Notes: generated from the sequence alone by a model not told the origin. A stretch of DNA of 64,000 bases from Dimorphilus gyrociliatus (GCA_904063045.1 CAJFCJ010000002.1:806001-870000); one strand, 5' to 3'; shown: positions 17,931-64,000, numbered from the stretch's first letter. Numbers and translations: made by a program.

Positions 17931-17979
<49 letters not shown>

Positions 17980-18916: not shown

Positions 18917-18923
18917 CGACCAC

Positions 18924-18957
18924 ACTGAATGGCGCGCAACGCCTGCACGCTTTTATA
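18924..18957 (-). promoter_or_regulatory. TATA box + Initiator core promoter of the LMO gene
   Basis: On the minus strand TATAAAAG begins at 18957 and Inr TCAGT has its A at 18926. That places TATA at -31, the canonical spacing, 10 nt before the ATG at 18916. Confidence 0.7.
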
Positions 18958-28739: not shown

Positions 28740-28970
28740 TTTTAAAAGTAGTATTAAAAGTTTTTTCACAACCTGATCGAATGAAACGCGGCAGGCAAGT
28801 GGCGCGGGCTAACACTCGATGTTTTTACGTAGTGATAGGAGACCGTTGCTACGTTAAGTTGATTTGAGTTTTTCCTAAGCTTCCATGGCACCCACGATTA
28901 TCGACTCTAGAGACTGAAAGTGACGTCAGCGGTTTATGTAAATATATTTTTAAAATATTCCTGTAGTATA
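28740..28970. promoter_or_regulatory. Probable bidirectional promoter with X-box-like motif and CRE
   Basis: 231 bp between divergent ATGs. GCTTCCATGGCACC at 28879-28892 matches the palindromic RFX X-box GTTNCCATGGNAAC at 12/14; a perfect TGACGTCA lies at 28921-28928. Confidence 0.5.
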
Positions 28971-39100: not shown

Positions 39101-42100
39101 CGATAACTATTTCATCGATTGCTTGCAATTTTTCTTTTACAACTAAAGTATCATCAAGCAATGCTTCCAATCGGGATACTAGTTTCGAGTCCCTTGCTGC
39201 TAAACCTGGTTGACAAAGAGAATCATATCTGTCATTTATTTTTTCAATTCCTGATTTTGCGTCTCTTATTGCTTCATCAGTTTCGTGCAACTTTTGAACA
39301 ATATTTTCCAAGTGATCAATGCGATTGGCAATTGCTTTTTCAAGCGACGACCATCTTTCTTGTAGATTATTCACCTTCGATTGAATATCATCTGGTTGAT
39401 CGACATATTTAGTCAACTCTACTGCATTCATTTGCAGGTTGTCATGGTCTAATGACTTTCTGAACATTTCGTTTTGCCAGGATTGAACTTCTTTCTGTTT
39501 TGCACTGATCAATTCTTTTTCTAGGAGTATTGGATCAACTTTCTCTAGTTTTTTCTCCATCATGTCAAGCCAAGCTGTAAGCAATTCAAACGGTCTTTCA
39601 ATTTTCTCAGACAAACTAGCTGCATAATTTAATTTATTCTTTTTATCATGTAAGCTGGTTTTCAGAGCTTTAAGCTGTCTGTCTACTGCTTCTCTTGTCT
39701 CCCCCACTTCAGGGAAATCCTTAGAATTTGAACTACTCTCTAACAGCTTCTTCCCCTTCTCAATAGCTAATCTTATTTGAGGTTCTCTGTCACTTAAATC
39801 TCTAGACCAATTTTCCATTTGGAGGACATGGCCTTTCAAATCTTCACTATTGGATGAAGTTGGTTCTAAACTTATCATAGCATTATCCAATTCTTTTAGA
39901 TATTCATCATAATTATTTAATTCTTCTTTAAGTTTATTGGTTTCTACCGTTGCACCTTCTATGGCCTTTTCTTTTTCGTTTAGGAGTTTTTCGATGCTTT
40001 TTAAAGGCCTTTCAACGGCTGCTACTTTGGTTCTCAATTCAAATTTTGTACTTGGATCTTTGGCTCTTTCTAGAAGCTTGTCAACAATACTTCGAGTGTT
40101 TTCTAACAGCGGTCGTTGTTCATTTAATTCTCCTTTTAAAGTTGCTATTTCTTCTATAAGAATATTCGGTTGCATGGAAGCGGACGGCAGACATTCTAAT
40201 TTTTCATTGGCTCCTGTTGTCCATTCATCAAGTTTTTGGAGTTTCTCATACATCTGAGAACTAAGATCATTAGCATCTTGTAGTTGATTATATCTCTCTT
40301 GAAGACTGTCTTTAAGATTGTCCCACTTCATAACTATTCCATCAAGTTGTTTCGAAACATGCTTATTTTCATCTTCAGCATCAGCTTTATCTAAAATAGC
40401 AAATCCCTTCAATTTAATTTTGTCAATTTGTACTTCATAATCTGTCATTTCCCCTTGCAATAATTCAACTTGTTGAATTTGAGAATTCAGAATGACAGGA
40501 TCAAGAGTTACGGCACCTAAAGTTTGAGCCATTCTCTCCTTTTGATTAAGCCAATTACCTACAAGTTGACAAGAACTATCAAAATCTTTTAGTTCAATCA
40601 GTTCTCCTCTCAATTCTTCAAGGGAGTTCATTCTCTCTTTAGATTTGGATTTTAAATTTTGCCAGCGATCCTCTGAAAATATAATTATTAATTCTTGTTT
40701 TTATATTTCATATGACTTTCTCACCTAAGTCTTTCCACTGTTTCTTTACATCTCGCAGGCCAGGCACACGGTCACGATTTCCGATTAAGTCTTGGGCGCA
40801 ATTTCTAACCGAGTCCATTAATCCTTCCTTCTTTTCAAGTTCTTTCTGGAATTCTTCTAAAGATAACAATCCTGCAGTAACTTCCTGCTGCGTCTTTGGA
40901 TGAGAAGACAGAGAAGGTGCAGGATCTGAGTCCAACCATTCAATCAAGGCTTGAACATGCTCCAAAAATGAACGCATTTTAGCAATTGTTAAATGCAGAT
41001 CTCTTTCTCTTTCAGCCAGTCTATCTCCAATAACTTCGTATCTATCGTTCAAATCAATAAGTTCTTTTTCGATAGACGAGCTCTCTTCTAAAAATGGACA
41101 ATTATAAAACAGATAACAATATTAAAGAAAAGTAATTCATGGAGCTATTGCAGGTATAAAAGCCCTGAAAATTTGGAGAACCTTACCATCAATAGCTGAA
41201 TGAAGGTTATCATGAGAAGCATGTTTACTGCTGACACCACTAGATTCACTAGTAACAGGACTGACTAAGCCCCTACTTGGAGGTGATGGGGATTTTGTTG
41301 GAGAGCGAGATCGTAACCGGGAAGAAATAGGTCCTGTGGGCGTAAGCATAGCAAAGAAAAGAAAAAAGAAAGGTTTTAAAAGCTGGGTTTTAACCAAATC
41401 CTTGAATAATAAAATAACGACTTACGTTTTGGCTTAATAAGAGAGAGCGAGTCATCTCTTTCAGAAGAATCGTATGCAAGACCTGTTTCATAAAGTTTGT
41501 CCATTGTTTGTACAAAGTCTGTATGATCCTTCAAAAGTGGTTGAATTGCATCAACCTGCAATGTTAATTTATCCATATCTATTGCAACAGGTCCAAGAGA
41601 TTGAACCTTTTCCTCCATATCCTTCAACCACAATTCTGAAATATTTTTCAATTTCAGATATTCTACTTCTTTTTCTAATCTGGCTTTGACTGAGCGTTCC
41701 TTTTCAGTCAGGAGCTCACAGAAGGAGTGCCATGATCTTTCCAAAGACTGAAGCTTGCCTTTTACACAATGAGAATCTGCTGAATTCTTATCTGCTAGGA
41801 GCTCTTGTGCTAATCTTTTTATATGCTCCAAATTTTCTACTCTCTTTTCTTTTTCAATTATAATCTTATCTACAAATTCTTTGAAATTAGTTGGGTTTCT
41901 CTGACATTCTCTAGAAGTCAGCTGGTCGGTAGTCGGGGTGATCCAAGATTCTTGTTCTCTAATCGCTCCGTTAAGCCTATCAAGTTTTTCACTCGTTTTA
42001 AGAAGAGCTTTTTCCCTGTCTGTGGCTTTTTGTGCAATCGTATCGTATTTCTCGCATAATACAACAGCTCTGTCTGATGAACTATTTCTTTTAATTGAGT

Positions 42101-45100
42101 CAACAGCAGGCTGGTGAGCATTTACATCTGCTTTTAAGGCTTGGCATTCTTGTTTCTGAAGGGCCAAGCTTTCTTCGTTTAGGCTACAGCCTCTCATCAT
42201 AGAAAGGATTGTGTTTGTTTCCCTTATCCACAGAGCCAAGTCGTCTAAAGTTTGACTAACTTCTTGGGCAGCCACAAGAGTCGTTTGAATGTCGTGGGCA
42301 GTATTATTCACAAAATTCGTTAGTGCACAGTGGCGTGATTCTATATCTTTTACGCAATTTTCCACTGTTTTCAATGAATTGCGATCAGCATTCATGTCAG
42401 TTAGACTATCAGTTAACAGTTTTCCTGCCTTCTTTAAGTCGTCAACCTGTCTATTATGTGCCACTATCTCGGCATTCATACTTTTTATTCTTTCTAGTTT
42501 ATTATGAGCATCCCCACTCTCAGTACGAAAATTTTCTGCTCTTTCTTCTGCATTCTTCAGCCATGCAACAAGACTATCTGCATTATCGTAGAAATATTTT
42601 GAGCATTCTTTCGTAGTGCTTAGTTTATTAAATAGATTATCGTATTTTAATTTTAGTTCAATATAGCTCTCTTCCATATCCTTGTACTGTTGCTTTATTC
42701 CGTCGCATTCAAATACACTACTTTGCCGTTTCTTTAATTTTGTTGTCTTTTCAACAGCTACAATAAAATTTTCAGCCAACTTTTGAACTGACTTTGCTTC
42801 TTCAATAAATCTTTGTTGAGTCAAATCCATGTAACGAAGGTCTCCTTTCTTAGCTAAAACGTCTCCAGTACATTCTTTTAGGCGACGAAGTACGTTATCA
42901 AGCATAACTAGGTCTTGGCTATCTTTTTCTATTTCTGCTATTTTAACTGTAGCCTCATCCAACCAATTAGAAAATCGCAAAGATTCAGTGTTAAATTTTG
43001 AGAGCTCTTCTTTGGCAGAGGCAGCAGCTTTGAATCTATTCTCCGTTTCGCATTTTAGCTGCAAAAACATCTATTATTCAGAGTACATTTACACGAGTAA
43101 TACAAACTCTCTCAAACTTCTCCTTTACAATCGGCATTAAAGTTTCGAGCTCAAGGACTTGTTCATTGATAAGTTCATCACGATTACTATGCAGAAATTC
43201 ATCGCATTGATCTAAAAGATTCATGGCGATAGGAAAGTATGTATTGGTCTCATCTTTCAAAGCCTGGAAAGAAACAAATAACAAAAAAGAAGCATGTGTC
43301 ATAAAAATCAAACCTCTATAGAGGAAATTAACTCTTTAATATCTTGAACATTTTCAGTAATATTTTGAAATGTCAGAGATATCATAGCTTCTTCAGCATC
43401 CTTTGCTTTGTGTTTCAATTTTCTTAATTCATGAATCAGCCTATCGTATATCTCATCAGTCGAAACCTATAATAAAATTTAAATTTAAGCCAACAAAACA
43501 CAAGAAGCACAGCGATCATTCACTCAATATAAATTAGTAAAACACTCATACACCAAAATATTTAATATATCATAATCGTTGGTTATGAAGCATGTTAACG
43601 CTGTAGATCATCAATTCAAAAAAGCGCTGAAAAAGTCAAAAAGTAATATCAACATTTCAAGAAATATACGAAATGTCAAAGAAAGAAATTAACTTACCGT
43701 CAAGCTCAAAGCATTTGAATCTCAACTAATCACAGTTGGGATCAAGCAAAACTCAAACATTACGAAAATCAAATATTAGATGTTACAAAAAAGAATAAAA
43801 AGAGATTGAACAAAACATGAAACAAACCTTCGAAGAATGAAATATACTAAAAGGATCTTCGCTTGTATAACCAGCATGCATTGGTTCATTAGAAATAGAC
43901 CTATCATTTGACTTACTATCAATGTTGGAATTTTTGGGGTCTGCAGATTCAAGAAAAACAACATTCTCTTTGGGAGAAACCTCACGTAACACATTATCGG
44001 ATTTGACATTAACATTAAAACACTCAGATTGCTTCTTTAATGGATCATCTGGAAGACTGAAATTTTCATGGCTATTTTTAACCTTACTTTCAGTTCCATG
44101 CAATACAAGTGGTTTTATATCATCACAAACAATCACATTATTTTCAATAGCATCAGGTATCGAAACAACAATTCCCGTTGTTGGATCTAGAAATTTGTTA
44201 TTTTTTCCATCAATAATCCCTTTTTCTATTGCCTTGTATAAAGATATCAAGGACTCAGTTGTAGGATCTCGGACTAACGATTTTTTATTATCCAGAAGAC
44301 CGCAGTTTAATGCTTCATTCAAATTTAAAAACTTTCCAGTAGCATCATCGCGAAACATTCCAGTTACAGGGTCAATAAGACCTTTATCATATGCTTCATT
44401 AAGAGTTAATGGTCTTGATATTAAACCACTATTTATAGCTTCATTTAGACTTATCATTTCATTAGTATGCGGATCTTTCATTTTTCCACTATCACCATCA
44501 ATTAAACCTCTCTCAATCGCCTCCGTAAGTGAACAATTTTCGCCAGTCTTGTTATCAACTATCAGTGAAGCATTCGGATCTAAAATTCCTTTTTCAATTG
44601 CTTCTTTTAGTGAAAGCTTTTCTCCGGTTTGTGGATCGATGATTTTTCCTGATTCTTTATCATACAGATTGTTTTCAATTAACGAATCTAATGACATCAA
44701 GGGTTTAGTGTCCTTCTCTAAAAGTTTCTTCGAATTTATTGCTTCTAGTAACTCTTGAGGTGTTGTTATCAATTTTTCGCTTAATGCTTTATCCAATGGG
44801 ATGACTTCTCCCGTCATTGGGTGAACCATAGTGGATTTTGATGGGTCGATTAAACCACGTTTAATGGCTTCTTCTAATGTTAGTACTTCACCAGTATTTG
44901 GATCAATGACATTTGCAGTTTGTGGATTGAATAATCCTCTTTTAATGGCATCTTGAAGACTTAGCTTATCTATTCTTTCCAAAGGAGTAACAAGTCCAGT
45001 ATTGATGGCTTCAAAAATATCCATATTATCATCATTCAAGCCCTTAAATTTTCCAGTTTCACCATCAATAATACCAGCTTTTATAGCATCTTCTAAAGTC

Positions 45101-48100
45101 ATCATTTTACCGGAAGTGTTATCATTAATAGTTTGTTTTCCGTCAATTATTCCACGTTTAATAGCGTCAGATAATGATAAAAGTTCATTCGTGTTTGGAT
45201 CTTTTACAAGACCAGTATTTTTATCAAAAATACCTTTCTGTAGTGCTTCATTTAGAGAACAACCGCTGTCTTTCTTCTTAACGTCGACCGGATGATCTAT
45301 CCATTCCATTGTTTCAGTTAAAGGCGTCTTTCTATTGGTCAAATGATTAATAAGTTCTGCATTTTCAACAATTCCTAACTTAAAAGCTTTATCCAAAGGT
45401 AATAGTTCACCAGTACTGTGATCAGTGATTTTAGTAGTTGTTGGATCAATTAAACCACTTTCAATAGCTTCTTTGAGTGAATATTTTTCTCCAGTATTTG
45501 GGTCTGTTATTTCACCTGTTTTTTCATTTATCAGACCATTTTGTAGAATTTCATCGAGTGTTAACGGTCTATTTGCCGTATTAACAGTTATACCAGTCTT
45601 AATTGCTTCTTTTAACGGCACTTTCTTACCAGTTATTGGGTCACAAAACATGTTCATCTCACCATCAATTATACCTCTCTCAATTGCAGTTTTTAAAGGT
45701 ATAAGTGCGCCTGTAGACGGATCTCTGACCAGTGATTTTTCAGTATCAATAAGACCTGCCTTAATAGCATCATTCAAAGTCATCAACTTTCCTGTTCCCT
45801 CATCTCGATACATTCCAGTTGAAGGATCAAAAAGTCCCTTCTCATATGCATCTTTAAGAGTTAATGGTCTTGATATTAAACCACTATTTATAGCTTCATT
45901 TAGACTTATCATTTCATTAGTATGCGGATCTTTCATTTTTCCACTATCACCATCAATTAAACCTCTCTCAATCGCCTCCGTAAGTGAACAATTATCGCCA
46001 GTCTTGTTATCAACTATCAGTGAAGCGTTCGGATCTAAAATTCCTTTTTCAATTGCTTCTTTTAGTGAAAGCTTTTCTCCGGTTTGTGGATCGATGATTT
46101 TTCCTGATTCTTTATCATACAGATTGTTTTCAATTAACGAATCTAATGACATCAAGGGTTTAGTGTCCTTCTCTAAAAGTTTCTTCGAATTTATTGCTTC
46201 AATTAACTCTTGAGGTGTTGATATCAATTTTTCGCTTAATGCTTTATCCAAGGGGATGACTTCTCCCGTCATTGGGTGAACCATAGTGGATTTTGATGGG
46301 TCGATTAAACCACGTTTAATGGCTTCTTCTAATGTTAATACTTCACCAGTATTTGGATCAATGACATTTGCAGTTTGTGGATTGAATAATCCTCTTTTAA
46401 TGGCATCTTGAAGACTTAGATTACGTACTTTTTCTGATGGTCTAATAAGTCCGCTATTGATTGCTTCCAAAATATCTATATTATCATCATTCAAGCCCTT
46501 AAATTTTCCAGTTTCTCCATCGATAATACCAGCATTAATTGCATCTTCTAAAGTCATTTCTTTACCGGAAGTGTTATCAGTTATTGTTTGTGTTCCATCA
46601 ATTATTCCACATTTAATAGCGTCAGATAATGATAAAAGTTCATTCGTGTTCGGATCTTTTACAAGACCAGTATTTTTATCAAAAATTCCTTGCTCCAAGG
46701 CATCATTCAGCAAACAACCTTGATCTGACTTTTTAAGATCTTCAAACTGATCTTTGCATTTTATTGAATCAAATAGAGGAGTTTTAGTGTTTGTCAAAGG
46801 ATCTACAAATTCTCCATTAATAATAAGTCCCATATTTACAGCTTCATCCAATGATAAAACTTTGCCAGTTGTAGGATTTGTAATTGTACCAGTTGTCGGG
46901 TCAATTAAACCAATTGCTAAAGCTTCTCTAAGTGAAAGTTGTTTTCCAGTATTTGGGTCTATGATTTCACCTGTCTTATCATTTAAAAGACCTCTTTTGT
47001 TAATTTCATCCAGTGTTAACGGTCTATTTTCCGCATTAACAATCATACCGGTTTCAATTGCCTCTCTCAATGGGATTTTCTTACCAGTAATTGGATCACA
47101 AAACATGTTCATCTCACCATCAATTATACCTCTCTCAATTGCACTGTTTAAAGGTAAAAGAGCGCCAGTAGATGGATCTCTAACCAATGATTTTTCAGTA
47201 TCAATAAGACCTGCCTTAATAGCATCATTCAAAGTCATCAACTTTCCTGTTCCCTCATCTCGATACATTCCAGTTGAAGTGTCAAAAAGGCCCTTTTCAT
47301 ATGCATCTTTAAGAGTTAATGGTCTTGATATTAAACCACTATTTATAGCTTCATTTAAACCAATCATTTCATTAGTATGCGGATCTTTCATTTTGCCACT
47401 CCCACCATCAATCAAACCTCTCTCAATCGCCTCCGTAAGTGAACAATTATCGCCAGTCTTGTTATCAACTATCAGTGAAGCGTTCGGATCTAAAATTCCT
47501 TTTTCAATTGCTTCTTTTAGTGAAAGCTTTTCTCCGGTTTGTGGATCGATGATTTTTCCTGATTCTTTATCATACAGATTGTTTTCAATTAACGAATCTA
47601 ATGACATCAAGGGTTTAGTGTCCTTCTCTAAAAGTTTCTTCGAATTTATTGCTTCTAGTAACTCTTGAGGTGTTGATATCAATTTTTCGCTTAATGCTTT
47701 ATCCAATGGGATGACTTCTCCCGTCATTGGGTGAACCATAGTGGATTTTGATGGGTCGATTAAACCACGTTTAATGGCTTCTTCTAATGTTAGTACTTCA
47801 CCAGTATTTGGATCAATGACATTTGCAGTTTGTGGATTGAATAATCCTCTTTTAATGGCATCTTGAAGACTTAGATTACGTACTTTTTCTGAGGGCGTAA
47901 GAAGTCCGCTAGTGATCGCTTCCAAAATATCTATATTATCATCATTCATGCCCTTAAATTTTCCAGTTTCTCCATCAATAATACCAGCATTAATTGCATC
48001 TTCTAAAGTCATTTCTTTACCGGAAGTGTTATCACTTATTGTTTGTGTTCCATCAATTATTCCACATTTAATAGCGTCAGATAATGATAAAAGTTCATTC

Positions 48101-51100
48101 GTGTTTGGATCTTTTACAAGACCAGTATTTTTATCAAAAATTCCCTGATCCAATGCTTCATTTAGTGAACGACTCTCCTTTTTCTTTTCTATGAGTTTTG
48201 AAAAACCTTCGCCGTTTTCCATTATTTGTGCTATAGGCCTTGCCCTCTTGGTTATAGGGTCGATAATTTCTCCATTATCGATGAGACCTGTTCTTACCGC
48301 TTCATCGATTGATAACATTTCACCACTAACAGGATCATTAATTTTTATGGATGTTGCATTAATTAAACCAGTTTCTAAAGCTTCATTAAGTGAACATTTT
48401 TTCCCAGTATTTGGGTCTGTAATCTCTCCCGTAGCTTCATTTAGGAGACCTCTATCTTTGATTTCTTCAAATGTTAACGGCTTTGTTTCTGCTTTGACCA
48501 CCAGTCCGCTTTTAATTGCTTCTTTTAAGGGAACTTTTTCACCAGCTATTGGGTCACAAAACATGTTCATCTCACCATCAATTATACCTCTCTCAATTGC
48601 AGTTTTTAAAGGTATAAGTGCGCCAGTAGATGGATCTCTAACCAATGATTTTTCAGTATCAATAAGACCTGCCTTAATAGCATCATTCAAAGTCATCAAC
48701 TTTCCTGTTCCCTCATCTCGATACATTCCAGTTGAAGGATCAAAAAGTCCCTTCTCATATGCATCTTTAAGAGTTAATGGTCTTGATATTAAACCACTAT
48801 TTATAGCTTCATTTAGACTTATCATTTCATTAGTATGCGGATCTTTCATTTTTCCACTATCACCATCAATTAAACCTCTCTCAATCGCCTCCGTAAGTGA
48901 ACAATTTTCGCCAGTCTTGTTATCAACTATCAGTGAAGCATTCGGATCTAAAATTCCTTTTTCAATTGCTTCTTTTAGTGAAAGCTTTTCTCCGGTTTGT
49001 GGATCGATGATTTTTCCTGATTCTTTATCATACAGATTGTTTTCAATTAACGAATCTAATGACATCAAGGGTTTAGTGTCCTTCTCTAAAAGTTTCTTCG
49101 AATTTATTGCTTCAATTAACTCTTGAGGTGTTGTTATCAATTTTTCGCTTAATGCTTTATCCAATGGGATGACTTCTCCCTTCATTGGGTGAACCATAGT
49201 GGATTTTGAAGGATCGATTAAACCACGCTTAATGGCTTCTTCTAATGTTAGTACTTCACCAGTATTTGGATCAATGACATTTGCAGTTTGTGGATTGAAT
49301 AATCCTCTTTTAATGGCATCTTGAAGACTTAGATTACATACTTTTTCTGATGGTGTAATAAGTCCGCTGTTGATTGCTTCAAGAATATCTATATCGTCAT
49401 CAGTAATACTCTTTATTTTTCCAGTTTCCCCGTCAATTAAACCAGCATTAATTGCATCTTCTAAAGTCATCATTTTACCTGAAGTGTTATCAGTTATTGT
49501 TTGTGTTCCATCAATTATTCCACATTTAATAGCGTCAGATAATGATAAAAGTTCATTCGTGTTGGGATCTTTTACAAGACTGGTATTTTTATCAAAAATA
49601 CCTTTCTTTATGGCTTCATTTAGTGAACAAGAATTGTCTTTGTCCTTACTGCCCACAGTTTGGTCCTTTAATTTCATTACTTCAGATAAAAGCATCTTCT
49701 TGTTGGTCAAAGGATTCACAACTTCTACATTTTCGATAATTCCTAACTTTACAGCTTTATCCAAAGGTAACATTTCACCAGTGGCTGGATCAGCAACTGT
49801 AGCGGTTGTTGGATCAATTAAACCAATTTCAAAAGCTTCCTTAAGTGAATGTTTTTCACCGGTAAATGGATCTATGATTTCACCGGTCTCTTCGTTTAAG
49901 AGACCTTGCCCTATAATTTCATCAAGGTTTAGAGGTATATTTTCAGCATTAACTGAAATTCCACTATCAATTGCTTCAAGTAAAGGTATCTCTCTTCCAT
50001 TAACAGGATCATAAAACAAATTCTTATCACCATCTATTATACCTCTTTCTATTGCACGGTGTAAAGGTATAAGTGCGCCAGTAGATGGATCTCTGACCAA
50101 AGATTTTTCAGAATCTATAAGACCTGCCTTAATAGCATCATTCAAAGTCATCAACTTTCCTGTTCCCTCATCTCGATACATTCCAGTTGAAGGATCAAAA
50201 AGTCCCTTCTCATATGCATCTTTAAGAGTTAATGGTCTTGATATTAAACCACTATTTATAGCTTCATTTAGACTTATCATTTCATTAGTATGCGGATCTT
50301 TCATTTTTCCACTATCACCATCAATTAAACCTCTCTCAATCGCCTCCGTAAGTGAACAATTTTCGCCAGTCTTGTTATCAACTATCAGTGAAGCATTCGG
50401 ATCTAAAATTCCTTTTTCAATTGCTTCTTTTAGTGAAAGCTTTTCTCCGGTTTGTGGATCGATGATTTTTCCTGATTCTTTATCATACAGATTGTTTTCA
50501 ATTAACGAATCTAATGACATCAAGGGTTTAGTGTCCTTCTCTAAAAGTTTCTTCGAATTTATTGCTTCTAGTAACTCTTGAGGTGTTGTTATCAATTTTT
50601 CGCTTAATGCTTTATCCAATGGGATGACTTCTCCCGTCATTGGGTGAACCATAGTGGATTTTGATGGGTCGATTAAACCACGTTTAATGGCTTCTTCTAA
50701 TGTTAGTACTTCACCAGTATTTGGATCAATGACATTTGCAGTTTGTGGATTGAATAATCCTCTTTTAATGGCATCTTGAAGACTTAGCTTATCTATTCTT
50801 TCCAAAGGAGTAACAAGTCCAGTATTGATGGCTTCAAAAATATCCATATTATCATCATTCAAGCCCTTAAATTTTCCAGTTTCACCATCAATAATACCAG
50901 CTTTTATAGCATCTTCTAAAGTCATCATTTTACCGGAAGTGTTATCATTAATAGTTTGTTTTCCGTCAATTATTCCACGTTTAATAGCGTCAGATAATGA
51001 TAAAAGTTCATTCGTGTTTGGATCTTTTACAAGACCAGTATTTTTATCAAAAATACCTTTCTGTAGTGCTTCATTTAGAGAACAACCGCTGTCTTTCTTC

Positions 51101-54100
51101 TTAACGTCGACCGGATGATCTATCCATTCCATTGTTTCAGTTAAAGGCGTCTTTCTATTGGTCAAATGATTAATAAGTTCTGCATTTTCAACAATTCCTA
51201 ACTTAAAAGCTTTATCCAAAGGTAATAGTTCACCAGTACTGTGATCAGTGATTTTAGTAGTTGTTGGATCAATTAAACCACTTTCAATAGCTTCTTTGAG
51301 TGAATATTTTTCTCCAGTATTTGGGTCTGTTATTTCACCTGTTTTTTCATTTATCAGACCATTTTGTAGAATTTCATCGAGTGTTAACGGTCTATTTGCC
51401 GTATTAACAGTTATACCAGTCTTAATTGCTTCTTTTAACGGCACTTTCTTACCAGTTATTGGGTCACAAAACATGTTCATCTCACCATCAATTATACCTC
51501 TCTCAATTGCAGTTTTTAAAGGTATAAGTGCGCCTGTAGACGGATCTCTGACCAGTGATTTTTCAGTATCAATAAGACCTGCCTTAATAGCATCATTCAA
51601 AGTCATCAACTTTCCTGTTCCCTCATCTCGATACATTCCAGTTGAAGGATCAAAAAGTCCCTTCTCATATGCATCTTTAAGAGTTAATGGTCTTGATATT
51701 AAACCACTATTTATAGCTTCATTTAGACTTATCATTTCATTAGTATGCGGATCTTTCATTTTTCCACTATCACCATCAATTAAACCTCTCTCAATCGCCT
51801 CCGTAAGTGAACAATTATCGCCAGTCTTGTTATCAACTATCAGTGAAGCGTTCGGATCTAAAATTCCTTTTTCAATTGCTTCTTTTAGTGAAAGCTTTTC
51901 TCCGGTTTGTGGATCGATGATTTTTCCTGATTCTTTATCATACAGATTGTTTTCAATTAACGAATCTAATGACATCAAGGGTTTAGTGTCCTTCTCTAAA
52001 AGTTTCTTCGAATTTATTGCTTCAATTAACTCTTGAGGTGTTGATATCAATTTTTCGCTTAATGCTTTATCCAAGGGGATGACTTCTCCCGTCATTGGGT
52101 GAACCATAGTGGATTTTGATGGGTCGATTAAACCACGTTTAATGGCTTCTTCTAATGTTAATACTTCACCAGTATTTGGATCAATGACATTTGCAGTTTG
52201 TGGATTGAATAATCCTCTTTTAATGGCATCTTGAAGACTTAGATTACGTACTTTTTCTGATGGTCTAATAAGTCCGCTATTGATTGCTTCCAAAATATCT
52301 ATATTATCATCATTCAAGCCCTTAAATTTTCCAGTTTCTCCATCGATAATACCAGCATTAATTGCATCTTCTAAAGTCATTTCTTTACCGGAAGTGTTAT
52401 CAGTTATTGTTTGTGTTCCATCAATTATTCCACATTTAATAGCGTCAGATAATGATAAAAGTTCATTCGTGTTCGGATCTTTTACAAGACCAGTATTTTT
52501 ATCAAAAATTCCTTGCTCCAAGGCATCATTCAGCAAACAACCTTGATCTGACTTTTTAAGATCTTCAAACTGATCTTTGCATTTTATTGAATCAAATAGA
52601 GGAGTTTTAGTGTTTGTCAAAGGATCTACAAATTCTCCATTAATAATAAGTCCCATATTTACAGCTTCATCCAATGATAAAACTTTGCCAGTTGTAGGAT
52701 TTGTAATTGTACCAGTTGTCGGGTCAATTAAACCAATTGCTAAAGCTTCTCTAAGTGAAAGTTGTTTTCCAGTATTTGGGTCTATGATTTCACCTGTCTT
52801 ATCATTTAAAAGACCTCTTTTGTTAATTTCATCCAGTGTTAACGGTCTATTTTCCGCATTAACAATCATACCGGTTTCAATTGCCTCTCTCAATGGGATT
52901 TTCTTACCAGTAATTGGATCACAAAACATGTTCATCTCACCATCAATTATACCTCTCTCAATTGCACTGTTTAAAGGTAAAAGAGCGCCAGTAGATGGAT
53001 CTCTAACCAATGATTTTTCAGTATCAATAAGACCTGCCTTAATAGCATCATTCAAAGTCATCAACTTTCCTGTTCCCTCATCTCGATACATTCCAGTTGA
53101 AGTGTCAAAAAGGCCCTTTTCATATGCATCTTTAAGAGTTAATGGTCTTGATATTAAACCACTATTTATAGCTTCATTTAAACCAATCATTTCATTAGTA
53201 TGCGGATCTTTCATTTTGCCACTCCCACCATCAATCAAACCTCTCTCAATCGCCTCCGTAAGTGAACAATTATCGCCAGTCTTGTTATCAACTATCAGTG
53301 AAGCGTTCGGATCTAAAATTCCTTTTTCAATTGCTTCTTTTAGTGAAAGCTTTTCTCCGGTTTGTGGATCGATGATTTTTCCTGATTCTTTATCATACAG
53401 ATTGTTTTCAATTAACGAATCTAATGACATCAAGGGTTTAGTGTCCTTCTCTAAAAGTTTCTTCGAATTTATTGCTTCTAGTAACTCTTGAGGTGTTGAT
53501 ATCAATTTTTCGCTTAATGCTTTATCCAATGGGATGACTTCTCCCGTCATTGGGTGAACCATAGTGGATTTTGATGGGTCGATTAAACCACGTTTAATGG
53601 CTTCTTCTAATGTTAGTACTTCACCAGTATTTGGATCAATGACATTTGCAGTTTGTGGATTGAATAATCCTCTTTTAATGGCATCTTGAAGACTTAGATT
53701 ACGTACTTTTTCTGAGGGCGTAAGAAGTCCGCTAGTGATCGCTTCCAAAATATCTATATTATCATCATTCATGCCCTTAAATTTTCCAGTTTCTCCATCA
53801 ATAATACCAGCATTAATTGCATCTTCTAAAGTCATTTCTTTACCGGAAGTGTTATCACTTATTGTTTGTGTTCCATCAATTATTCCACATTTAATAGCGT
53901 CAGATAATGATAAAAGTTCATTCGTGTTTGGATCTTTTACAAGACCAGTATTTTTATCAAAAATTCCCTGATCCAATGCTTCATTTAGTGAACGACTCTC
54001 CTTTTTCTTTTCTATGAGTTTTGAAAAACCTTCGCCGTTTTCCATTATTTGTGCTATAGGCCTTGCCCTCTTGGTTATAGGGTCGATAATTTCTCCATTA

Positions 54101-57100
54101 TCGATGAGACCTGTTCTTACCGCTTCATCGATTGATAACATTTCACCACTAACAGGATCATTAATTTTTATGGATGTTGCATTAATTAAACCAGTTTCTA
54201 AAGCTTCATTAAGTGAACATTTTTTCCCAGTATTTGGGTCTGTAATCTCTCCCGTAGCTTCATTTAGGAGACCTCTATCTTTGATTTCTTCAAATGTTAA
54301 CGGCTTTGTTTCTGCTTTGACCACCAGTCCGCTTTTAATTGCTTCTTTTAAGGGAACTTTTTCACCAGCTATTGGGTCACAAAACATGTTCATCTCACCA
54401 TCAATTATACCTCTCTCAATTGCAGTTTTTAAAGGTATAAGTGCGCCAGTAGATGGATCTCTAACCAATGATTTTTCAGTATCAATAAGACCTGCCTTAA
54501 TAGCATCATTCAAAGTCATCAACTTTCCTGTTCCCTCATCTCGATACATTCCAGTTGAAGGATCAAAAAGTCCCTTCTCATATGCATCTTTAAGAGTTAA
54601 TGGTCTTGATATTAAACCACTATTTATAGCTTCATTTAGACTTATCATTTCATTAGTATGCGGATCTTTCATTTTTCCACTATCACCATCAATTAAACCT
54701 CTCTCAATCGCCTCCGTAAGTGAACAATTTTCGCCAGTCTTGTTATCAACTATCAGTGAAGCATTCGGATCTAAAATTCCTTTTTCAATTGCTTCTTTTA
54801 GTGAAAGCTTTTCTCCGGTTTGTGGATCGATGATTTTTCCTGATTCTTTATCATACAGATTGTTTTCAATTAACGAATCTAATGACATCAAGGGTTTAGT
54901 GTCCTTCTCTAAAAGTTTCTTCGAATTTATTGCTTCAATTAACTCTTGAGGTGTTGTTATCAATTTTTCGCTTAATGCTTTATCCAATGGGATGACTTCT
55001 CCCTTCATTGGGTGAACCATAGTGGATTTTGAAGGATCGATTAAACCACGCTTAATGGCTTCTTCTAATGTTAGTACTTCACCAGTATTTGGATCAATGA
55101 CATTTGCAGTTTGTGGATTGAATAATCCTCTTTTAATGGCATCTTGAAGACTTAGATTACATACTTTTTCTGATGGTGTAATAAGTCCGCTGTTGATTGC
55201 TTCAAGAATATCTATATCGTCATCAGTAATACTCTTTATTTTTCCAGTTTCCCCGTCAATTAAACCAGCATTAATTGCATCTTCTAAAGTCATCATTTTA
55301 CCTGAAGTGTTATCAGTTATTGTTTGTGTTCCATCAATTATTCCACATTTAATAGCGTCAGATAATGATAAAAGTTCATTCGTGTTGGGATCTTTTACAA
55401 GACTGGTATTTTTATCAAAAATACCTTTCTTTATGGCTTCATTTAGTGAACAAGAATTGTCTTTGTCCTTACTGCCCACAGTTTGGTCCTTTAATTTCAT
55501 TACTTCAGATAAAAGCATCTTCTTGTTGGTCAAAGGATTCACAACTTCTACATTTTCGATAATTCCTAACTTTACAGCTTTATCCAAAGGTAACATTTCA
55601 CCAGTGGCTGGATCAGCAACTGTAGCGGTTGTTGGATCAATTAAACCAATTTCAAAAGCTTCCTTAAGTGAATGTTTTTCACCGGTAAATGGATCTATGA
55701 TTTCACCGGTCTCTTCGTTTAAGAGACCTTGCCCTATAATTTCATCAAGGTTTAGAGGTATATTTTCAGCATTAACTGAAATTCCACTATCAATTGCTTC
55801 AAGTAAAGGTATCTCTCTTCCATTAACAGGATCATAAAACAAATTCTTATCACCATCTATTATACCTCTTTCTATTGCACGGTGTAAAGGTATAAGTGCG
55901 CCAGTAGATGGATCTCTGACCAAAGATTTTTCAGAATCTATAAGACCTGCCTTAATAGCATCATTCAAAGTCATCAACTTTCCTGTTCCCTCATCTCGAT
56001 ACATTCCAGTTGAAGGATCAAAAAGTCCCTTCTCATATGCATCTTTAAGAGTTAATGGTCTTGATATTAAACCACTATTTATAGCTTCATTTAGACTTAT
56101 CATTTCATTAGTATGCGGATCTTTCATTTTTCCACTATCACCATCAATTAAACCTCTCTCAATCGCCTCCGTAAGTGAACAATTTTCGCCAGTCTTGTTA
56201 TCAACTATCAGTGAAGCATTCGGATCTAAAATTCCTTTTTCAATTGCTTCTTTTAGTGAAAGCTTTTCTCCGGTTTGTGGATCGATGATTTTTCCTGATT
56301 CTTTATCATACAGATTGTTTTCAATTAACGAATCTAATGACATCAAGGGTTTAGTGTCCTTCTCTAAAAGTTTCTTCGAATTTATTGCTTCTAGTAACTC
56401 TTGAGGTGTTGTTATCAATTTTTCGCTTAATGCTTTATCCAATGGGATGACTTCTCCCGTCATTGGGTGAACCATAGTGGATTTTGATGGGTCGATTAAA
56501 CCACGTTTAATGGCTTCTTCTAATGTTAGTACTTCACCAGTATTTGGATCAATGACATTTGCAGTTTGTGGATTGAATAATCCTCTTTTAATGGCATCTT
56601 GAAGACTTAGCTTATCTATTCTTTCCAAAGGAGTAACAAGTCCAGTATTGATGGCTTCAAAAATATCCATATTATCATCATTCAAGCCCTTAAATTTTCC
56701 AGTTTCACCATCAATAATACCAGCTTTTATAGCATCTTCTAAAGTCATCATTTTACCGGAAGTGTTATCATTAATAGTTTGTTTTCCGTCAATTATTCCA
56801 CGTTTAATAGCGTCAGATAATGATAAAAGTTCATTCGTGTTTGGATCTTTTACAAGACCAGTATTTTTATCAAAAATACCTTTCTGTAGTGCTTCATTTA
56901 GAGAACAACCGCTGTCTTTCTTCTTAACGTCGACCGGATGATCTATCCATTCCATTGTTTCAGTTAAAGGCGTCTTTCTATTGGTCAAATGATTAATAAG
57001 TTCTGCATTTTCAACAATTCCTAACTTAAAAGCTTTATCCAAAGGTAATAGTTCACCAGTACTGTGATCAGTGATTTTAGTAGTTGTTGGATCAATTAAA

Positions 57101-60100
57101 CCACTTTCAATAGCTTCTTTGAGTGAATATTTTTCTCCAGTATTTGGGTCTGTTATTTCACCTGTTTTTTCATTTATCAGACCATTTTGTAGAATTTCAT
57201 CGAGTGTTAACGGTCTATTTGCCGTATTAACAGTTATACCAGTCTTAATTGCTTCTTTTAACGGCACTTTCTTACCAGTTATTGGGTCACAAAACATGTT
57301 CATCTCACCATCAATTATACCTCTCTCAATTGCAGTTTTTAAAGGTATAAGTGCGCCTGTAGACGGATCTCTGACCAGTGATTTTTCAGTATCAATAAGA
57401 CCTGCCTTAATAGCATCATTCAAAGTCATCAACTTTCCTGTTCCCTCATCTCGATACATTCCAGTTGAAGGATCAAAAAGTCCCTTCTCATATGCATCTT
57501 TAAGAGTTAATGGTCTTGATATTAAACCACTATTTATAGCTTCATTTAGACTTATCATTTCATTAGTATGCGGATCTTTCATTTTTCCACTATCACCATC
57601 AATTAAACCTCTCTCAATCGCCTCCGTAAGTGAACAATTATCGCCAGTCTTGTTATCAACTATCAGTGAAGCGTTCGGATCTAAAATTCCTTTTTCAATT
57701 GCTTCTTTTAGTGAAAGCTTTTCTCCGGTTTGTGGATCGATGATTTTTCCTGATTCTTTATCATACAGATTGTTTTCAATTAACGAATCTAATGACATCA
57801 AGGTTTAGTGTCCTTCTCTAAAAGTTTCTTCGAATTTATTGCTTCAATTAACTCTTGAGGTGTTGATATCAATTTTTCGCTTAATGCTTTATCCAAGGGG
57901 ATGACTTCTCCCGTCATTGGGTGAACCATAGTGGATTTTGATGGGTCGATTAAACCACGTTTAATGGCTTCTTCTAATGTTAATACTTCACCAGTATTTG
58001 GATCAATGACATTTGCAGTTTGTGGATTGAATAATCCTCTTTTAATGGCATCTTGAAGACTTAGATTACGTACTTTTTCTGATGGTCTAATAAGTCCGCT
58101 ATTGATTGCTTCCAAAATATCTATATTATCATCATTCAAGCCCTTAAATTTTCCAGTTTCTCCATCGATAATACCAGCATTAATTGCATCTTCTAAAGTC
58201 ATTTCTTTACCGGAAGTGTTATCAGTTATTGTTTGTGTTCCATCAATTATTCCACATTTAATAGCGTCAGATAATGATAAAAGTTCATTCGTGTTCGGAT
58301 CTTTTACAAGACCAGTATTTTTATCAAAAATTCCTTGCTCCAAGGCATCATTCAGCAAACAACCTTGATCTGACTTTTTAAGATCTTCAAACTGATCTTT
58401 GCATTTTATTGAATCAAATAGAGGAGTTTTAGTGTTTGTCAAAGGATCTACAAATTCTCCATTAATAATAAGTCCCATATTTACAGCTTCATCCAATGAT
58501 AAAACTTTGCCAGTTGTAGGATTTGTAATTGTACCAGTTGTCGGGTCAATTAAACCAATTGCTAAAGCTTCTCTAAGTGAAAGTTGTTTTCCAGTATTTG
58601 GGTCTATGATTTCACCTGTCTTATCATTTAAAAGACCTCTTTTGTTAATTTCATCCAGTGTTAACGGTCTATTTTCCGCATTAACAATCATACCGGTTTC
58701 AATTGCCTCTCTCAATGGGATTTTCTTACCAGTAATTGGATCACAAAACATGTTCATCTCACCATCAATTATACCTCTCTCAATTGCACTGTTTAAAGGT
58801 AAAAGAGCGCCAGTAGATGGATCTCTAACCAATGATTTTTCAGTATCAATAAGACCTGCCTTAATAGCATCATTCAAAGTCATCAACTTTCCTGTTCCCT
58901 CATCTCGATACATTCCAGTTGAAGTGTCAAAAAGGCCCTTTTCATATGCATCTTTAAGAGTTAATGGTCTTGATATTAAACCACTATTTATAGCTTCATT
59001 TAAACCAATCATTTCATTAGTATGCGGATCTTTCATTTTGCCACTCCCACCATCAATCAAACCTCTCTCAATCGCCTCCGTAAGTGAACAATTTTCGCCA
59101 GTCTTGTTATCAACTATCAGTGAAGCGTTCGTATCTAAAATTCCTTTTTCAATTGCTTCTTTTAGTGAAAGCTTTTCTCCGGTTTGTGGATCGACGATTT
59201 TTCCTGATTCTTTATCATACAGATTGTTTTCAATTAACGAATCTAATGACATCAAGGGTTTAGTGTCCTTCTCTAAAAGTTTCTTCGAATTTATTGCTTC
59301 TAGTAACTCTTGAGGTGTTGTTATCAATTTTTCGCTTAATGCTTTATCCAAGGGGATGACTTCTCCCGTCATTGGGTGAACCATAGTTGATTTTGAAGGA
59401 TCGATTAAACCACGCTTAATGGCTTCTTCTAATGTTAATACTTCACCAGTATTTGGATCAATGACATTTGCAGTTTGAGAATCTAATATTCTTGTTTCTA
59501 ATGTACCTTCTGTACTCAAATTTTTTTCGAGGTCTTTTTCTCCTAAGAGTCGTTGTTTAAATGCTTCTGTTAAAGGCACTACTTTTCCTGTTGTTTTATC
59601 AAGATAATTATTTTCGTTGATATCAATGATACCCTTTTCTATTGCTTTGGATAGTGGAATTAGTGCTCCTGTGTGATTATCTTTCACTAAAGAACGTTCT
59701 CCGTCTATTAAGCCAAGTTTGAGAGCTTCTCTCATTGTTAATTTTTGTCCATTGAGCTCATCGATAAAAATGCCGGTTGAAGGATCAAAAAGCGATTTCT
59801 TAAATGCTTCTTTAAGAGTCAGCATTGGCTTTATTTCTGATAATTTTGTTGTTATTGGAACAAGTCGATTGGTTTTAGGCAAACAAATCCATATTTTTTC
59901 GAAATTTATACGCGCATGAGGGTTTTGGATCTTAGTGTAAGGTATTTCTTTCATGTTATCAGTTATTACAGAATTTACTATCTTTGGATCTTGGGAGATA
60001 TTTTGGTATTTTTGTACTAGTTCTGATATTTTTATCTTTCCACTTTCGGTGCAGACGATTGATCTAGGATCTATTACTGTAAGTCTAATCGCTGTTGCAA

Positions 60101-63100: not shown

Positions 63101-64000
63101 TCTGTTGTAGAAGTTGAAGTTAAAACGAAATGAGGCTGATCAGGAATAATTAAGCCTGCAGAGATGGCAATATCTAATGGTATAGCCTTTCCAGTTGCAG
63201 GATCTAACCATATTTTCTTTTCTGTATCTACAAGTCCACTTTTAATAGCAGCACTTAGCAACATTGGTGTTGACGATGATTCCAAAATATGATCTGTCTT
63301 TGAGCTGCTCACTTTCGGAAGTTCATGTCTCTTTACACTTTCATCTGTACTTTGTACAGTTACAGTTTGCTTAGTTTCTATCGTTAGCTGAGGCTCGTTG
63401 AACTCATTGCCAAATTTATTCCCAGATTCTGTTATTAATAGATTTAACTCAGCTGCTTTGGATAGATCTATATCCCCAAGTTGGGGATGATGAAAGGTAC
63501 CAGTTGCAGGGTCTATAAGTCCTCTTTGATTACCTTCTTCTAGGGATATTATTTCATTAGTATTGGGATCAATTATTTTTTCAATAGCCTCTATTCTGTT
63601 TTGATCTTTGAAGGGTTGTAATCTAACAGGTCTCCTTATAAATCCTTCATCATAGGCTTGTTTTATGCTTTGTATCTCACCAGTTTTTGTGTTACAAAAA
63701 GTTTGTTTATCTAGATCCAGTATTTTGCGATTTAAAGCTTCTTGAATAGACAACATTTCATTATCTGCTACATCGTAGACGACACTTATCTCAATTGGTT
63801 CTTCTTGAATATGTGCTTCAACCGTTACATAGGTTGCCTCATCTCTCGGTAAATCGTCGTAATCTCCATCGTCTGTTTCCTCTTCAGCTTTTATATAACC
63901 TCTTTCTATTGCCTCCAAAATAGACATTTGCTCTCCAGTATAAGTATTCATATATCTACCAGCAATTCTATTAGTAATACCTCGTCTTTCTGCTTCTTCG
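30123..64000 (-). CDS. MACF1: Spectraplakin, 3' portion: plectin-repeat region, spectrin-repeat rod, two EF-hands, GAS2 domain, Ser/Arg-rich tail; continues past the right edge
   Basis: Plectin repeats ([41 protein letters not shown]) from 64000 to 43828; spectrin repeats 43466-33000; the conserved [42 protein letters not shown] and [31 protein letters not shown]-hands; GAS2 domain ([14 protein letters not shown]...[42 protein letters not shown]); [13 protein letters not shown]; tail with [15 protein letters not shown]. The window alone holds roughly 10,300 codons. Single family member, co-orthologous to MACF1/DST/shot. Confidence 0.97.
43828..62674 (-). other. Giant single coding exon (~18.85 kb) of the spectraplakin
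   Basis: Acceptor GGTGCTTTTAG at 62675 (after a 64-nt intron 62738-62675 with GTAAGT donor) and donor AAG|GTTTGT at 43827. The frame is open throughout except for one missing base at 57802. Confidence 0.85.
44401..59477 (-). repeat. Coding tandem array: ten 1455/1458-bp units arranged as a 5823-bp four-unit higher-order repeat
   Basis: The marker CATCAAGGGTTTAGTG recurs with GG(G) at 44701, 46156, 47611, 49069, 50524, 51979, 53434, 54892, 56347, 57802 and 59256 (spacings 1455,1455,1458,1455,1455,1455,1458,1455,1455,1454). Antisense ORFs in the supplied track repeat with identical translation at offsets of 5823. Confidence 0.97.

What the first reader, a model, noticed from the sequence alone, without database searches (positions are those of the whole stretch)
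44401..59477. Protein-coding array organised like a satellite higher-order repeat (C-A-B-D x2.5, period 5823 bp)
In transcription order the ten units run C,A,B,D,C,A,B,D,C,A. Diagnostic peptides are C: [14 protein letters not shown]; A: [14 protein letters not shown]; B: [14 protein letters not shown]; D: [15 protein letters not shown] (1458 bp, one extra codon). Units one period apart looked identical, including synonymous sites, wherever I compared them. The only differences I found besides the 57802 deletion are three substitutions in the outermost C unit (59094, 59132, 59195). This implies two levels of evolution: older unit divergence, then very recent block duplication by unequal crossing-over, as in alpha-satellite HORs. 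The protein length may be polymorphic between individuals. An assembly over-expansion is the main alternative.
Basis: partly seen in the sequence, partly recalled or inferred. Interest (0 to 1): 0.75.

Follow-up and report, generated by a model that had tools for sequence, protein, structure and literature searches.

The report
Block-duplicated plakin repeats in spectraplakin exon
A giant exon of an annelid cytoskeletal-linker gene (spectraplakin, the shot/MACF1 family) holds ten 485-residue repeat units arranged as a four-unit block copied 2.5 times without one base substitution. The pattern is real in the assembly and instructive, but it is a known kind of repeat-protein evolution, and its copy number still needs checking against raw reads.

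Summary
On the minus strand, ten 1455/1458-nt units run C-A-B-D-C-A-B-D-C-A. At a shift of 5823 nt there are 0 substitutions in 8,873 compared positions. One base is missing from a GGG run at 57801-57803.

The array lies in an 18.85-kb exon (43828-62674). This exon is the second of two giant plakin-repeat exons of a spectraplakin gene ordered CH, SH3_10, plakin repeats, spectrin rod, EF-hand, GAS2. The assembly size and contig count match the published Dimorphilus gyrociliatus assembly.

There are three nested periods: 27 aa, 485 aa and 1941 aa. The unit types are mosaics. A 148-aa core is old (dS 0.5-1.0, dN/dS 0.27-0.51). The rest of each unit is homogenised between types (dS 0.01-0.23). Both edges of the array fall in these constant segments, which are natural substrates for unequal crossing-over.

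The frameshift is probably a long-read homopolymer error. The copy number could not be checked because I found no independent reads or contigs.

Close precedents exist: epiplakin (copy-number-variable, almost identical plakin-repeat domains in one exon) and spider silk genes (higher-level repeats in one exon). I rate it a new member of a known kind, of moderate-to-low interest. The scan had already noted this exon (s1-083333).

The parts
43828..62674 (-). Plakin-repeat exon 2 of the spectraplakin gene. It is 18,847 nt, or 6,282 codons plus a split codon once the one missing base is counted.
   Evidence: The open frames 43783-57801 and 57798-62684 give Pfam Plectin (PF00681) E = 0 and 1.2e-115. 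The acceptor is ttttag at 62675-62680. The donor is AAG|gtttgt at 43827.
62675..62738 (-). 64-nt intron (gtaagt...ttttag) between the two plakin-repeat exons.
   Evidence: Read directly. Phase 1 on both sides keeps the frame.
62739..64000 (-). 3' end of plakin-repeat exon 1. Its open frame of about 2,874 aa continues beyond the window to about G000:C2:877300.
   Evidence: an open frame of 2,898 codons with Plectin hits.
44399..59093 (-). Block-level array: 2.52 copies of a 5823-nt, four-unit block, with 0 substitutions and 1 indel between copies.
57625..59078 (-). Unit C1 (1454 nt). It holds the one-base deletion.
57801..57803 (-). Site of the missing base. This copy has GG where both other C copies have GGG. 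The frame stops 1-3 nt downstream, at 57798-57800.
56170..57624 (-). Unit A1.
54715..56169 (-). Unit B1.
53257..54714 (-). Unit D1 (1458 nt).
51802..53256 (-). Unit C2.
50347..51801 (-). Unit A2. This unit was used for the structure model and the searches.
48892..50346 (-). Unit B2.
47434..48891 (-). Unit D2 (1458 nt). Its variable core is 48163-48606.
45979..47433 (-). Unit C3.
44524..45978 (-). Unit A3.
44095..44523 (-). Older partial unit 'post' (unit positions 1-143). Its first 125 nt are identical to the heads of A, B and D alike; after that it is about 64% identical in protein.
59079..59525 (-). Older truncated unit 'pre' (unit positions 337-485).
59547..59834 (-). Older fragment matching unit positions 35-130. 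Together with 'pre' it forms a unit that lacks its core.
32967..43070 (-). Spectrin-repeat rod exons and EF-hand of the same gene.
   Evidence: Spectrin E = 8e-107, 2.1e-21 and 1.1e-20; EF-hand hits.
32212..32476 (-). GAS2 (microtubule-binding) domain exons of the same gene.
   Evidence: G000:C2:838212-838476, 74.1 bits.

Best explanation
**What it is.** The stretch is the internal plakin-repeat region of a spectraplakin gene, the family of shot, MACF1, dystonin and VAB-10. The host is a small-genome annelid whose assembly statistics match Dimorphilus gyrociliatus.

**Three levels of repetition.**
- The basic element is a short, 27-residue plakin repeat, predicted as a beta-hairpin plus one short helix.
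- About 18-20 of these make a 485-residue unit.
- Four unit types (C, A, B, D) make a 1941-residue block, present 2.5 times.

**How it most likely arose (inferred).**
- The unit types share nearly identical flanks (unit positions 1-95 and 244-486). These flanks have been homogenised by gene conversion or unequal exchange.
- The flanks surround an old, type-specific 148-residue core.
- The constant flanks (300-700 nt at 96-100% identity) are substrates for non-allelic homologous recombination in any register.
- A four-unit misalignment duplicated the block. At least one further exchange, or a conversion tract of about 3 kb, gave the present C-A-B-D-C-A-B-D-C-A.
- These events were very recent, or homogenisation is still going on.

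**Effect.** The amplification adds about 2,950 residues to a plakin-repeat region of about 9,150 residues. By analogy with Shot and MACF1b, that region sits between the plakin domain and the spectrin rod in the largest isoforms, where it would act as a long acidic spacer or docking region.

**The missing base.** The missing G is most likely a residual homopolymer error of the long-read consensus.
For: **Gene identity**
- Plectin repeats, E = 0.
- On the same strand and in order: CH at C2:883207-883623, SH3_10 at C2:879121-879312, spectrin repeats and EF-hand, GAS2.
- The best relatives are annelid and arthropod shot/MACF1/dystonin proteins, at no more than 30% identity.
- PDB sequence and fold hits are the plakin-repeat domains of desmoplakin, envoplakin, plectin and periplakin.

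**Hierarchy**
- Autocorrelation peaks at shifts of 1941, 485 and 27 aa.
- The structure model shows a hairpin-plus-helix about every 27 residues.

**Block identity**
- 0 mismatches in 8,873 compared positions.

**Mosaic units**
- Core dS 0.52-1.02 against flank dS 0.01-0.23.
- Private differences come in blocks, and all three 2|2 site partitions occur, 27:15:9.

**Edges in the constant segments**
-.

**Coding constraint**
- dN/dS is 0.27-0.51 in the cores and lower in the flanks.
- 14 kb of open frame lies downstream of the break.

**Single locus**
- The units occur only here in the assembly, with no alternative haplotig.
- There is no N in the window.

**Assembly method**
- PacBio, PBcR, Quiver, Pilon, HaploMerger2 (PMC7854359).
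- Its 78 Mb and about 350 scaffolds match G000's 77.9 Mb and 349 contigs.
Against: - The copy number and the perfect identity rest on one 2015-era long-read assembly that was also passed through a haplotype merger.
- Short-read polishing of multi-mapping repeats can make copies look more alike than they are.
- A four-unit periodic array is exactly where the register between overlapping reads is ambiguous.
- No independent contig or read of this exon was found.
- 2.5 copies need more than one event, so the history is inferred, not read off.
- The fold model is of modest quality (pLDDT 70.5, pTM 0.30). Global superposition on solved plakin-repeat domains is poor (TM no higher than 0.24).
Confidence: 0.7

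Rival explanations
1. The copy number is an assembly artefact. The real array has one block fewer (C-A-B-D-C-A) or more blocks than shown. The extra block would come from a register slip between overlapping long reads, or from HaploMerger2 joining two haplotype contigs one period out of step. The perfect identity would come from polishing with multi-mapping reads.
For: - The assembly pipeline is PBcR, Quiver, Pilon, HaploMerger2 and SSPACE-LongRead.
- The 14.7-kb array has a 5.8-kb period, of the order of read lengths of that period.
- The one frame-breaking homopolymer deletion shows that the consensus here is not perfect.
Against: - Overlap-layout assemblers tend to collapse identical tandem blocks rather than expand them (established behaviour; inference).
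- The contig is continuous, 4.6 Mb long, with no N in the window.
- No second copy or haplotig of the locus exists.
- Even the minimal alternative (1.5 blocks) keeps identical C-A pairs four units apart, so a recent block-level exchange is still needed.
Confidence: 0.25
2. The one-base deletion is real. The plakin-repeat isoform then ends at 57798-57800, after about 4,500 residues of plakin repeats. That gives a plectin, BPAG1e or VAB-10A-like protein ending in plakin repeats, and the remaining 4,672 codons are a freshly dead tail.
For: - The sequence as given has the break.
- Isoforms that end in plakin repeats exist in C. elegans VAB-10A and in BPAG1e (PMC2173965).
Against: - 14 kb of frame stays open downstream in AT-rich DNA, and the downstream units are identical to the upstream ones, so any such break must be extremely young.
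- A deletion in a GGG run is the typical residual error of PacBio CLR consensus.
- The site lies in a segment shared by all 11 units, where short-read polishing cannot place reads.
Confidence: 0.15
3. The block is not young. An older six-to-ten-unit array with four-unit periodicity is kept identical by continuing long-tract gene conversion, possibly under selection for exact repeats.
For: - Homogenisation between unit types is demonstrably active in the flanks.
- 2.5 copies are more easily reached by conversion of pre-existing units than by duplication alone.
- Other notes of this scan report sharply bounded near-identical tracts inside old duplicates elsewhere in this genome (unchecked).
Against: - Conversion has not erased the cores between neighbouring unit types, whose dS is 0.5-1.0. 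Tracts would therefore have to be strictly in four-unit register.
- There is not one difference in 8.9 kb.
Confidence: 0.2

Closest known systems
Internal plakin-repeat region of Drosophila Short stop (isoform PH) and of MACF1b / dystonin
   Same: - A giant exon of plectin-type repeats inserted between the plakin domain and the spectrin rod of a CH...GAS2 spectraplakin (PMC2173965; 10.1101/122010).
- The repeats diverge from the two-helix consensus and are not grouped into 4.5-repeat domains.
- A 27-residue period is shared by 58 of the 60 sampled relatives.
   Different: - About 9,150 residues in two exons here, against about 3,000 in Shot.
- None of the 60 sampled relatives shows any 485- or 1941-residue periodicity or near-identical large units.
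- Sequence identity to all of them is at most 30%.
Epiplakin (EPPK1)
   Same: - A plakin-family protein encoded in a single exon.
- Modules of about 500 residues (a plakin-repeat domain plus linker) that are almost identical and vary in copy number, giving 9-17 domains in human and mouse (PMC9563781, PMC8782857).
   Different: - Epiplakin repeats one module type, not a four-type block.
- Its modules are canonical 38-residue, 4.5-repeat domains that bind keratin.
- It has no other domains.
- Here the units are acidic (pI 4.6-4.8) and lie in the middle of a spectraplakin.
Higher-level repeats in single-exon spider dragline silk genes (L. hesperus MaSp1 / MaSp2)
   Same: - Coding arrays with nested periodicity. 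In MaSp1, four ensemble-repeat types in fixed order form a higher-level unit that is repeated in tandem and homogenised.
- MaSp2 has a 2,334-nt tandem pair more than 99.7% identical, ascribed to unequal crossing-over (PMC1885213).
   Different: - Silk units are short and of low complexity (about 30 aa; about 120 aa for the higher-level unit), repeated 20 times.
- Here the units are 485-aa folded-repeat modules, the block is 1941 aa, and there are only 2.5 copies.
Alpha-satellite higher-order repeats; the nebulin triplicate region
   Same: - Diverged monomers inside a block and near-identical blocks, homogenised by unequal exchange, with less homogenised edges.
- The nebulin triplicate region is a coding block (eight exons repeated three times) that varies in copy number (PMC9109913, abstract seen).
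   Different: - Satellites are non-coding and have hundreds to thousands of copies.
- The nebulin block has introns.
- This array is one uninterrupted exon under purifying selection.

Membership tests
Spectraplakin (shot / MACF1 / dystonin / VAB-10) | N-terminal calponin-homology actin-binding domain in the same gene | tested here: met
   CH hit of 66.7 bits at G000:C2:883207-883623, minus strand, upstream of the repeats. Only one CH match was seen, and it is interrupted by introns.
Spectraplakin (shot / MACF1 / dystonin / VAB-10) | Plakin domain (SH3 embedded in spectrin repeats) | tested here: met
   SH3_10 (PF17902) hit of 53 bits at C2:879121-879312, minus strand, between the CH domain and the plakin repeats.
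Spectraplakin (shot / MACF1 / dystonin / VAB-10) | Spectrin-repeat rod, EF-hands and a GAS2 domain at the C-terminal end | tested here: met
   Spectrin E = 8e-107 with 11 stretches, plus EF-hand, in 32967-38255. More spectrin repeats lie in 38916-43070. GAS2 scores 74.1 bits at window 32212-32352.
Spectraplakin (shot / MACF1 / dystonin / VAB-10) | All parts joined in one mRNA | not testable with these tools
   No transcript data were available.
Plakin (plectin) repeat, Pfam PF00681 | Score above the curated cut-off | tested here: met
   1881.8 and 377.4 bits against a cut-off of 20.5. There are 41 hits in the genome, all but one at this locus.
Plakin (plectin) repeat, Pfam PF00681 | 38-residue repeat made of a beta-hairpin followed by two antiparallel helices | tested here: not met
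   The period is 27 residues. Only profile positions 8-33 of 39 are matched. The model shows a hairpin plus one 6-residue helix per repeat.
Plakin repeat domain (globular 4.5-repeat module that binds intermediate filaments) | Fold superposes on solved plakin-repeat domains | tested here: inconclusive
   Solved plakin-repeat domains are the top Foldseek hits (5dzz at E = 4e-9; also 4qmd, 1lm7, 1lm5, 2n03, 4q28), but TM is at most 0.24 and the model's pTM is 0.30.
Plakin repeat domain (globular 4.5-repeat module that binds intermediate filaments) | Basic groove that binds acidic filament rods | tested here: inconclusive
   Whole units are acidic, with pI 4.6-4.8. This is only a crude proxy, and no surface was analysed.
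Satellite-type higher-order repeat | Monomers diverged from each other, while copies of the multi-monomer block are near-identical | tested here: met
   Unit types are 86-88% identical in DNA (55-74% in the core), while block copies are 100% identical.
Satellite-type higher-order repeat | Long, non-coding array of many block copies | tested here: not met
   There are 2.52 copies, in an open reading frame under purifying selection.
Epiplakin-type copy-number-variable plakin modules | Almost identical large plakin-repeat modules in tandem within one exon | tested here: met
Epiplakin-type copy-number-variable plakin modules | Copy number differs between individuals | not testable with these tools
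   There is only one assembly, and no independent contigs of the exon were found.

The most novel reading that the evidence does not exclude
The unit architecture is not just a by-product of recombination. Old, type-specific 148-residue cores held between recombination-prone constant segments would form a cassette system. Such a system would let the worm's largest cytoskeletal linker change its length and its order of binding cassettes quickly, in steps of 485 or 1941 residues, with alleles of different length segregating and under selection. This would be a tunable molecular ruler in an animal whose genome is otherwise being compacted.
Probability: 0.1. Interest if true: 0.55.

Novelty: new member of a known kind. 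Interest (0 to 1): 0.3.

Why it matters
- **A clean worked example.** The array shows how giant repeat proteins grow. Three nested periods and three age layers are readable in one exon, and the recombination substrates (the constant flanks) are visible next to the parts that resist homogenisation (the cores).
- **Size.** If the copy number is right, the plakin-repeat region is about 9,150 residues, roughly three times that of Drosophila Shot. The animal is known for genome compaction, so the largest isoform would be among the largest spectraplakins described.
- **Annotation.** The locus is a trap for annotation and for short-read work. The one-base break splits the exon into two open frames, and the identical blocks cannot be resolved by short reads.
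- **A side observation.** Invertebrate spectraplakin repeats have a 27-residue, one-helix period rather than the textbook 38-residue form. This may deserve structural follow-up.

Tried and rejected
- **TRF.** It found nothing because its period limit is 500.
- **Bacterial gene reading.** The tool set and ORF lists first suggested it. I rejected it on the plectin, spectrin, CH and GAS2 content, the short gtaagt...ag introns, and the 78-Mb genome.
- **Whole-unit DNA search of the own genome.** It failed for size. A 120-nt probe worked.
- **Taxon from the spectrin exon.** This gave one weak hit, because the length window excludes full-length relatives.
- **COX1 for species identity.** It found only frame-broken, NUMT-like pieces, which cannot be searched by reference.
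- **Independent contigs of the exon.**
  - The word search with one unit gave at most 39% identity.
  - The exhaustive HMMER search with one variable core gave at most 41% identity. The list filled with giant plakin-repeat proteins, and no near-identical fragment was present.
- **Sub-periods inside the unit.** None was found beyond 27 aa.
- **"Post-duplication mutations" reading of the three substitutions.** Rejected.
- **"The 3' edge is a B-type head" reading.** Rejected, because the head is identical in A, B and D.
- **Handling of the break and the exons.** Inside my scripts I read the broken exon through with an N (X in protein) at the break.
- **Scope checks.** The contig is not human. Nothing here is a toxin, an effector or a virus.


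Full report
**1. What is in the sequence**

The window is 64 kb of AT-rich DNA (about 34% G+C) with no N. From about 30 kb to its end, the minus strand carries a series of very long open frames.

Repeat finding gives 10-11 copies spaced 1455, 1455, 1458, 1455 nt, and so on. A shift-by-shift comparison shows the following:
- At shift 5823 the sequence is identical, with no mismatch, from 44399 to 51980.
- The third copy then lacks one G of a GGG run at 57801-57803.
- At shift 5822 identity continues without mismatch up to 53271/59093.

That is 8,873 compared positions without a substitution, and a block-level array of 14,695 nt, or 2.52 periods.

An HMM of the unit finds ten complete units. It also finds truncated, older units on both sides: unit positions 35-130 and 337-485 before C1, and positions 1-143 after A3. 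Units one period apart have dS = dN = 0.

**2. What it is**

Both halves of the frame are dominated by Pfam Plectin repeats, at 1881.8 and 377.4 bits. The array lies in one exon, 43828-62674, with its acceptor at 62675-62680 and its donor at 43827. A 64-nt intron separates it from a second plakin-repeat exon of about 2,874 codons that runs beyond the window.

The other parts of the gene lie on the same strand:
- Downstream: spectrin-repeat exons with an EF-hand and a GAS2 domain at 32212-32476.
- Upstream: an SH3_10 plakin-domain hit at C2:879121-879312 and a CH domain at C2:883207-883623.

This is the canonical spectraplakin order, with an internal plakin-repeat region as in Shot-PH and MACF1b (PMC2173965; 10.1101/122010). 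I searched the exons one by one.

The nearest proteins are shot/MACF1/dystonin homologues of annelids and arthropods, at no more than 30% identity; the best is from Paralvinella.

The genome has 77.9 Mb in 349 contigs. This matches the published PacBio assembly of Dimorphilus gyrociliatus, which has about 78 Mb and about 350 scaffolds (PMC7854359). Earlier notes of this scan name the same species. I treat the species as inferred, not proven. The contig is not human.

**3. Anatomy of the repeats**

There are three nested periods:
- **27 residues.** The protein autocorrelates at 27 residues, as do 58 of the 60 sampled relatives (P0038 peaks at 227 and P0046 at 38); arthropod proteins often add a 99-residue period.
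- **485 and 1941 residues.** Only this protein autocorrelates at these shifts (0.54 and 0.74). No relative exceeds about 0.12 at any large shift.
- **Inside a unit.** Only the 27-residue period is seen.

An AlphaFold2 model of unit A (pLDDT 70.5, pTM 0.30) shows a beta-hairpin plus one six-residue helix about every 27 residues, with a few hairpin-less short repeats. Only profile positions 8-33 of the 39-position Pfam model are matched. The second helix of the textbook 38-residue repeat is therefore missing, as Röper and Brown suspected for Shot.

Solved plakin-repeat domains are the top hits by sequence and by fold (5dzz, 4qmd, 1lm5, 1lm7, 2n03, 4q28). The global superposition is poor, with TM at most 0.24. 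Homology to plakin repeats is therefore secure. A globular 4.5-repeat domain is not supported. The units are acidic, with pI 4.6-4.8.

**4. Age layers**

The four unit types are 82-83% identical in protein overall (80% for B against D), but the divergence is very uneven:

| Unit positions | Protein identity between types | dS | dN/dS |
|---|---|---|---|
| 1-95 and 352-486 | 95-100% (88% in the 82-108 bin) | 0.01-0.23 | low |
| 244-351 | intermediate | not measured alone (0.07-0.17 over 244-486) | not measured alone (0.22-0.37 over 244-486) |
| 96-243 (core) | 31-68% | 0.52-1.02 | 0.27-0.51 |

A five- to twenty-fold drop of synonymous divergence inside one unit is not explained by protein constraint. 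It indicates homogenisation of the flanks between unit types.

In agreement with this, private differences come in blocks: C-specific in positions 1-54, B-specific in 82-162 and 298-324, and A-specific in 271-351. All three possible two-by-two site partitions occur, 27:15:9. That is incompatible with a single tree and typical of gene conversion.

There are therefore at least three layers: old cores, later flank homogenisation, and the block amplification.

**5. Edges and mechanism**

In that segment all unit types differ at only 4-10 sites. At 59094 and 59321 the older unit carries the A/B-type base. They are differences between paralogues, not mutations that arose after duplication.

At the other end, the first 125 nt after A3 are identical to the heads of A, B and D alike. 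The sequence then diverges sharply.

Both edges thus fall in the constant inter-core segment, which is the natural substrate for non-allelic homologous recombination. One tandem duplication gives exactly two copies. Reaching 2.5 copies needs a second exchange, such as a gain followed by the loss of B-D, or a conversion tract of about 3 kb over pre-existing units. This history is inferred.

With no substitution in 8,873 sites, the 95% upper bound on divergence between copies is about 3.4e-4 per site. The events are therefore very young, or conversion is continuing.

**6. The frameshift**

The missing G stops the frame at 57798-57800. Downstream, 4,672 codons stay open in AT-rich DNA and are identical to the upstream copies.

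The assembly was made from PacBio CLR reads with PBcR, then Quiver and Pilon. Homopolymer deletions are the typical residual error of such a consensus. The site also lies in a segment shared by all eleven units, where short reads cannot be placed. I rate a consensus error at about 80-85%.

**7. Is the copy number real?**

This could not be tested.
- For the assembly: the units occur only at this locus, and there is no haplotig. The contig is continuous. Overlap-layout assemblers tend to collapse identical tandem blocks rather than expand them (inference from general knowledge).
- Against trusting it: a haplotype merger and scaffolder were used. Polishing with multi-mapping reads can erase small real differences. 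Neither the word search with a whole unit nor the exhaustive search with one variable core found any near-identical independent fragment.

I put the assembled structure at about 70% for "at least two identical blocks" and lower for "exactly 2.5".

**8. Comparison with what is known**

- **Epiplakin.** This plakin-family protein is encoded in one exon and carries almost identical plakin-repeat modules whose number varies between individuals, 9-17 domains (PMC9563781; PMC8782857). That is a direct precedent for both the structure and the predicted polymorphism.
- **Spider dragline silk genes.** These show four repeat types in fixed order forming a homogenised higher-level unit, and a 2.3-kb tandem pair more than 99.7% identical, all in single exons and ascribed to unequal crossing-over (PMC1885213).
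- **Nebulin.** Its triplicate region is another coding block that varies in copy number.
- **Satellite higher-order repeats.** The analogy describes the pattern well, but the array is coding and has only 2.5 copies, so it is not a member of that class.

**9. Verdict**

This is a real and tidy example of hierarchical repeat evolution in a spectraplakin. It is unusual among the 60 relatives sampled, but of a known kind. Interest is moderate to low. The main open point is read-level confirmation of the copy number and of the one-base break.

Noticed in passing
G000:C12:820176-836267 (minus strand): A second locus combines an SH3_10 hit (836151-836267), one weak plectin-repeat hit (835104-835178) and a GAS2 hit (820176-820304). 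It may be a second, much smaller plakin or spectraplakin-like gene. No strong spectrin hits were seen there at E <= 1e-8.
   Followed up: no
G000:C26:604073-605291: COX1-like pieces lie in three different frames, with in-frame TGA, TAA and TAG codons, inside a nuclear-sized contig. This is probably a nuclear copy of mitochondrial DNA.
   Followed up: no
Proteins P0001-P0060 and window 43828-62674: 58 of the 60 invertebrate spectraplakin plakin-repeat regions sampled have a dominant 27-residue period (arthropod proteins often also 99), not the textbook 38 (P0038 peaks at 227, P0046 at 38). The model here shows one helix per repeat. I do not know of a structural description of this short form.
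   Followed up: partly
window 696-1316 (-), 23012-24217 (-), 28920-29738 (+): The neighbouring genes are a FAK-type FERM exon, an FCP1-type phosphatase C-terminal part with BRCT, and an EF-hand protein. They are ordinary.
   Followed up: no
window 16000-20000: G+C rises to 41-44% against about 32% around it. There is no Rfam match anywhere in the window.
   Followed up: no
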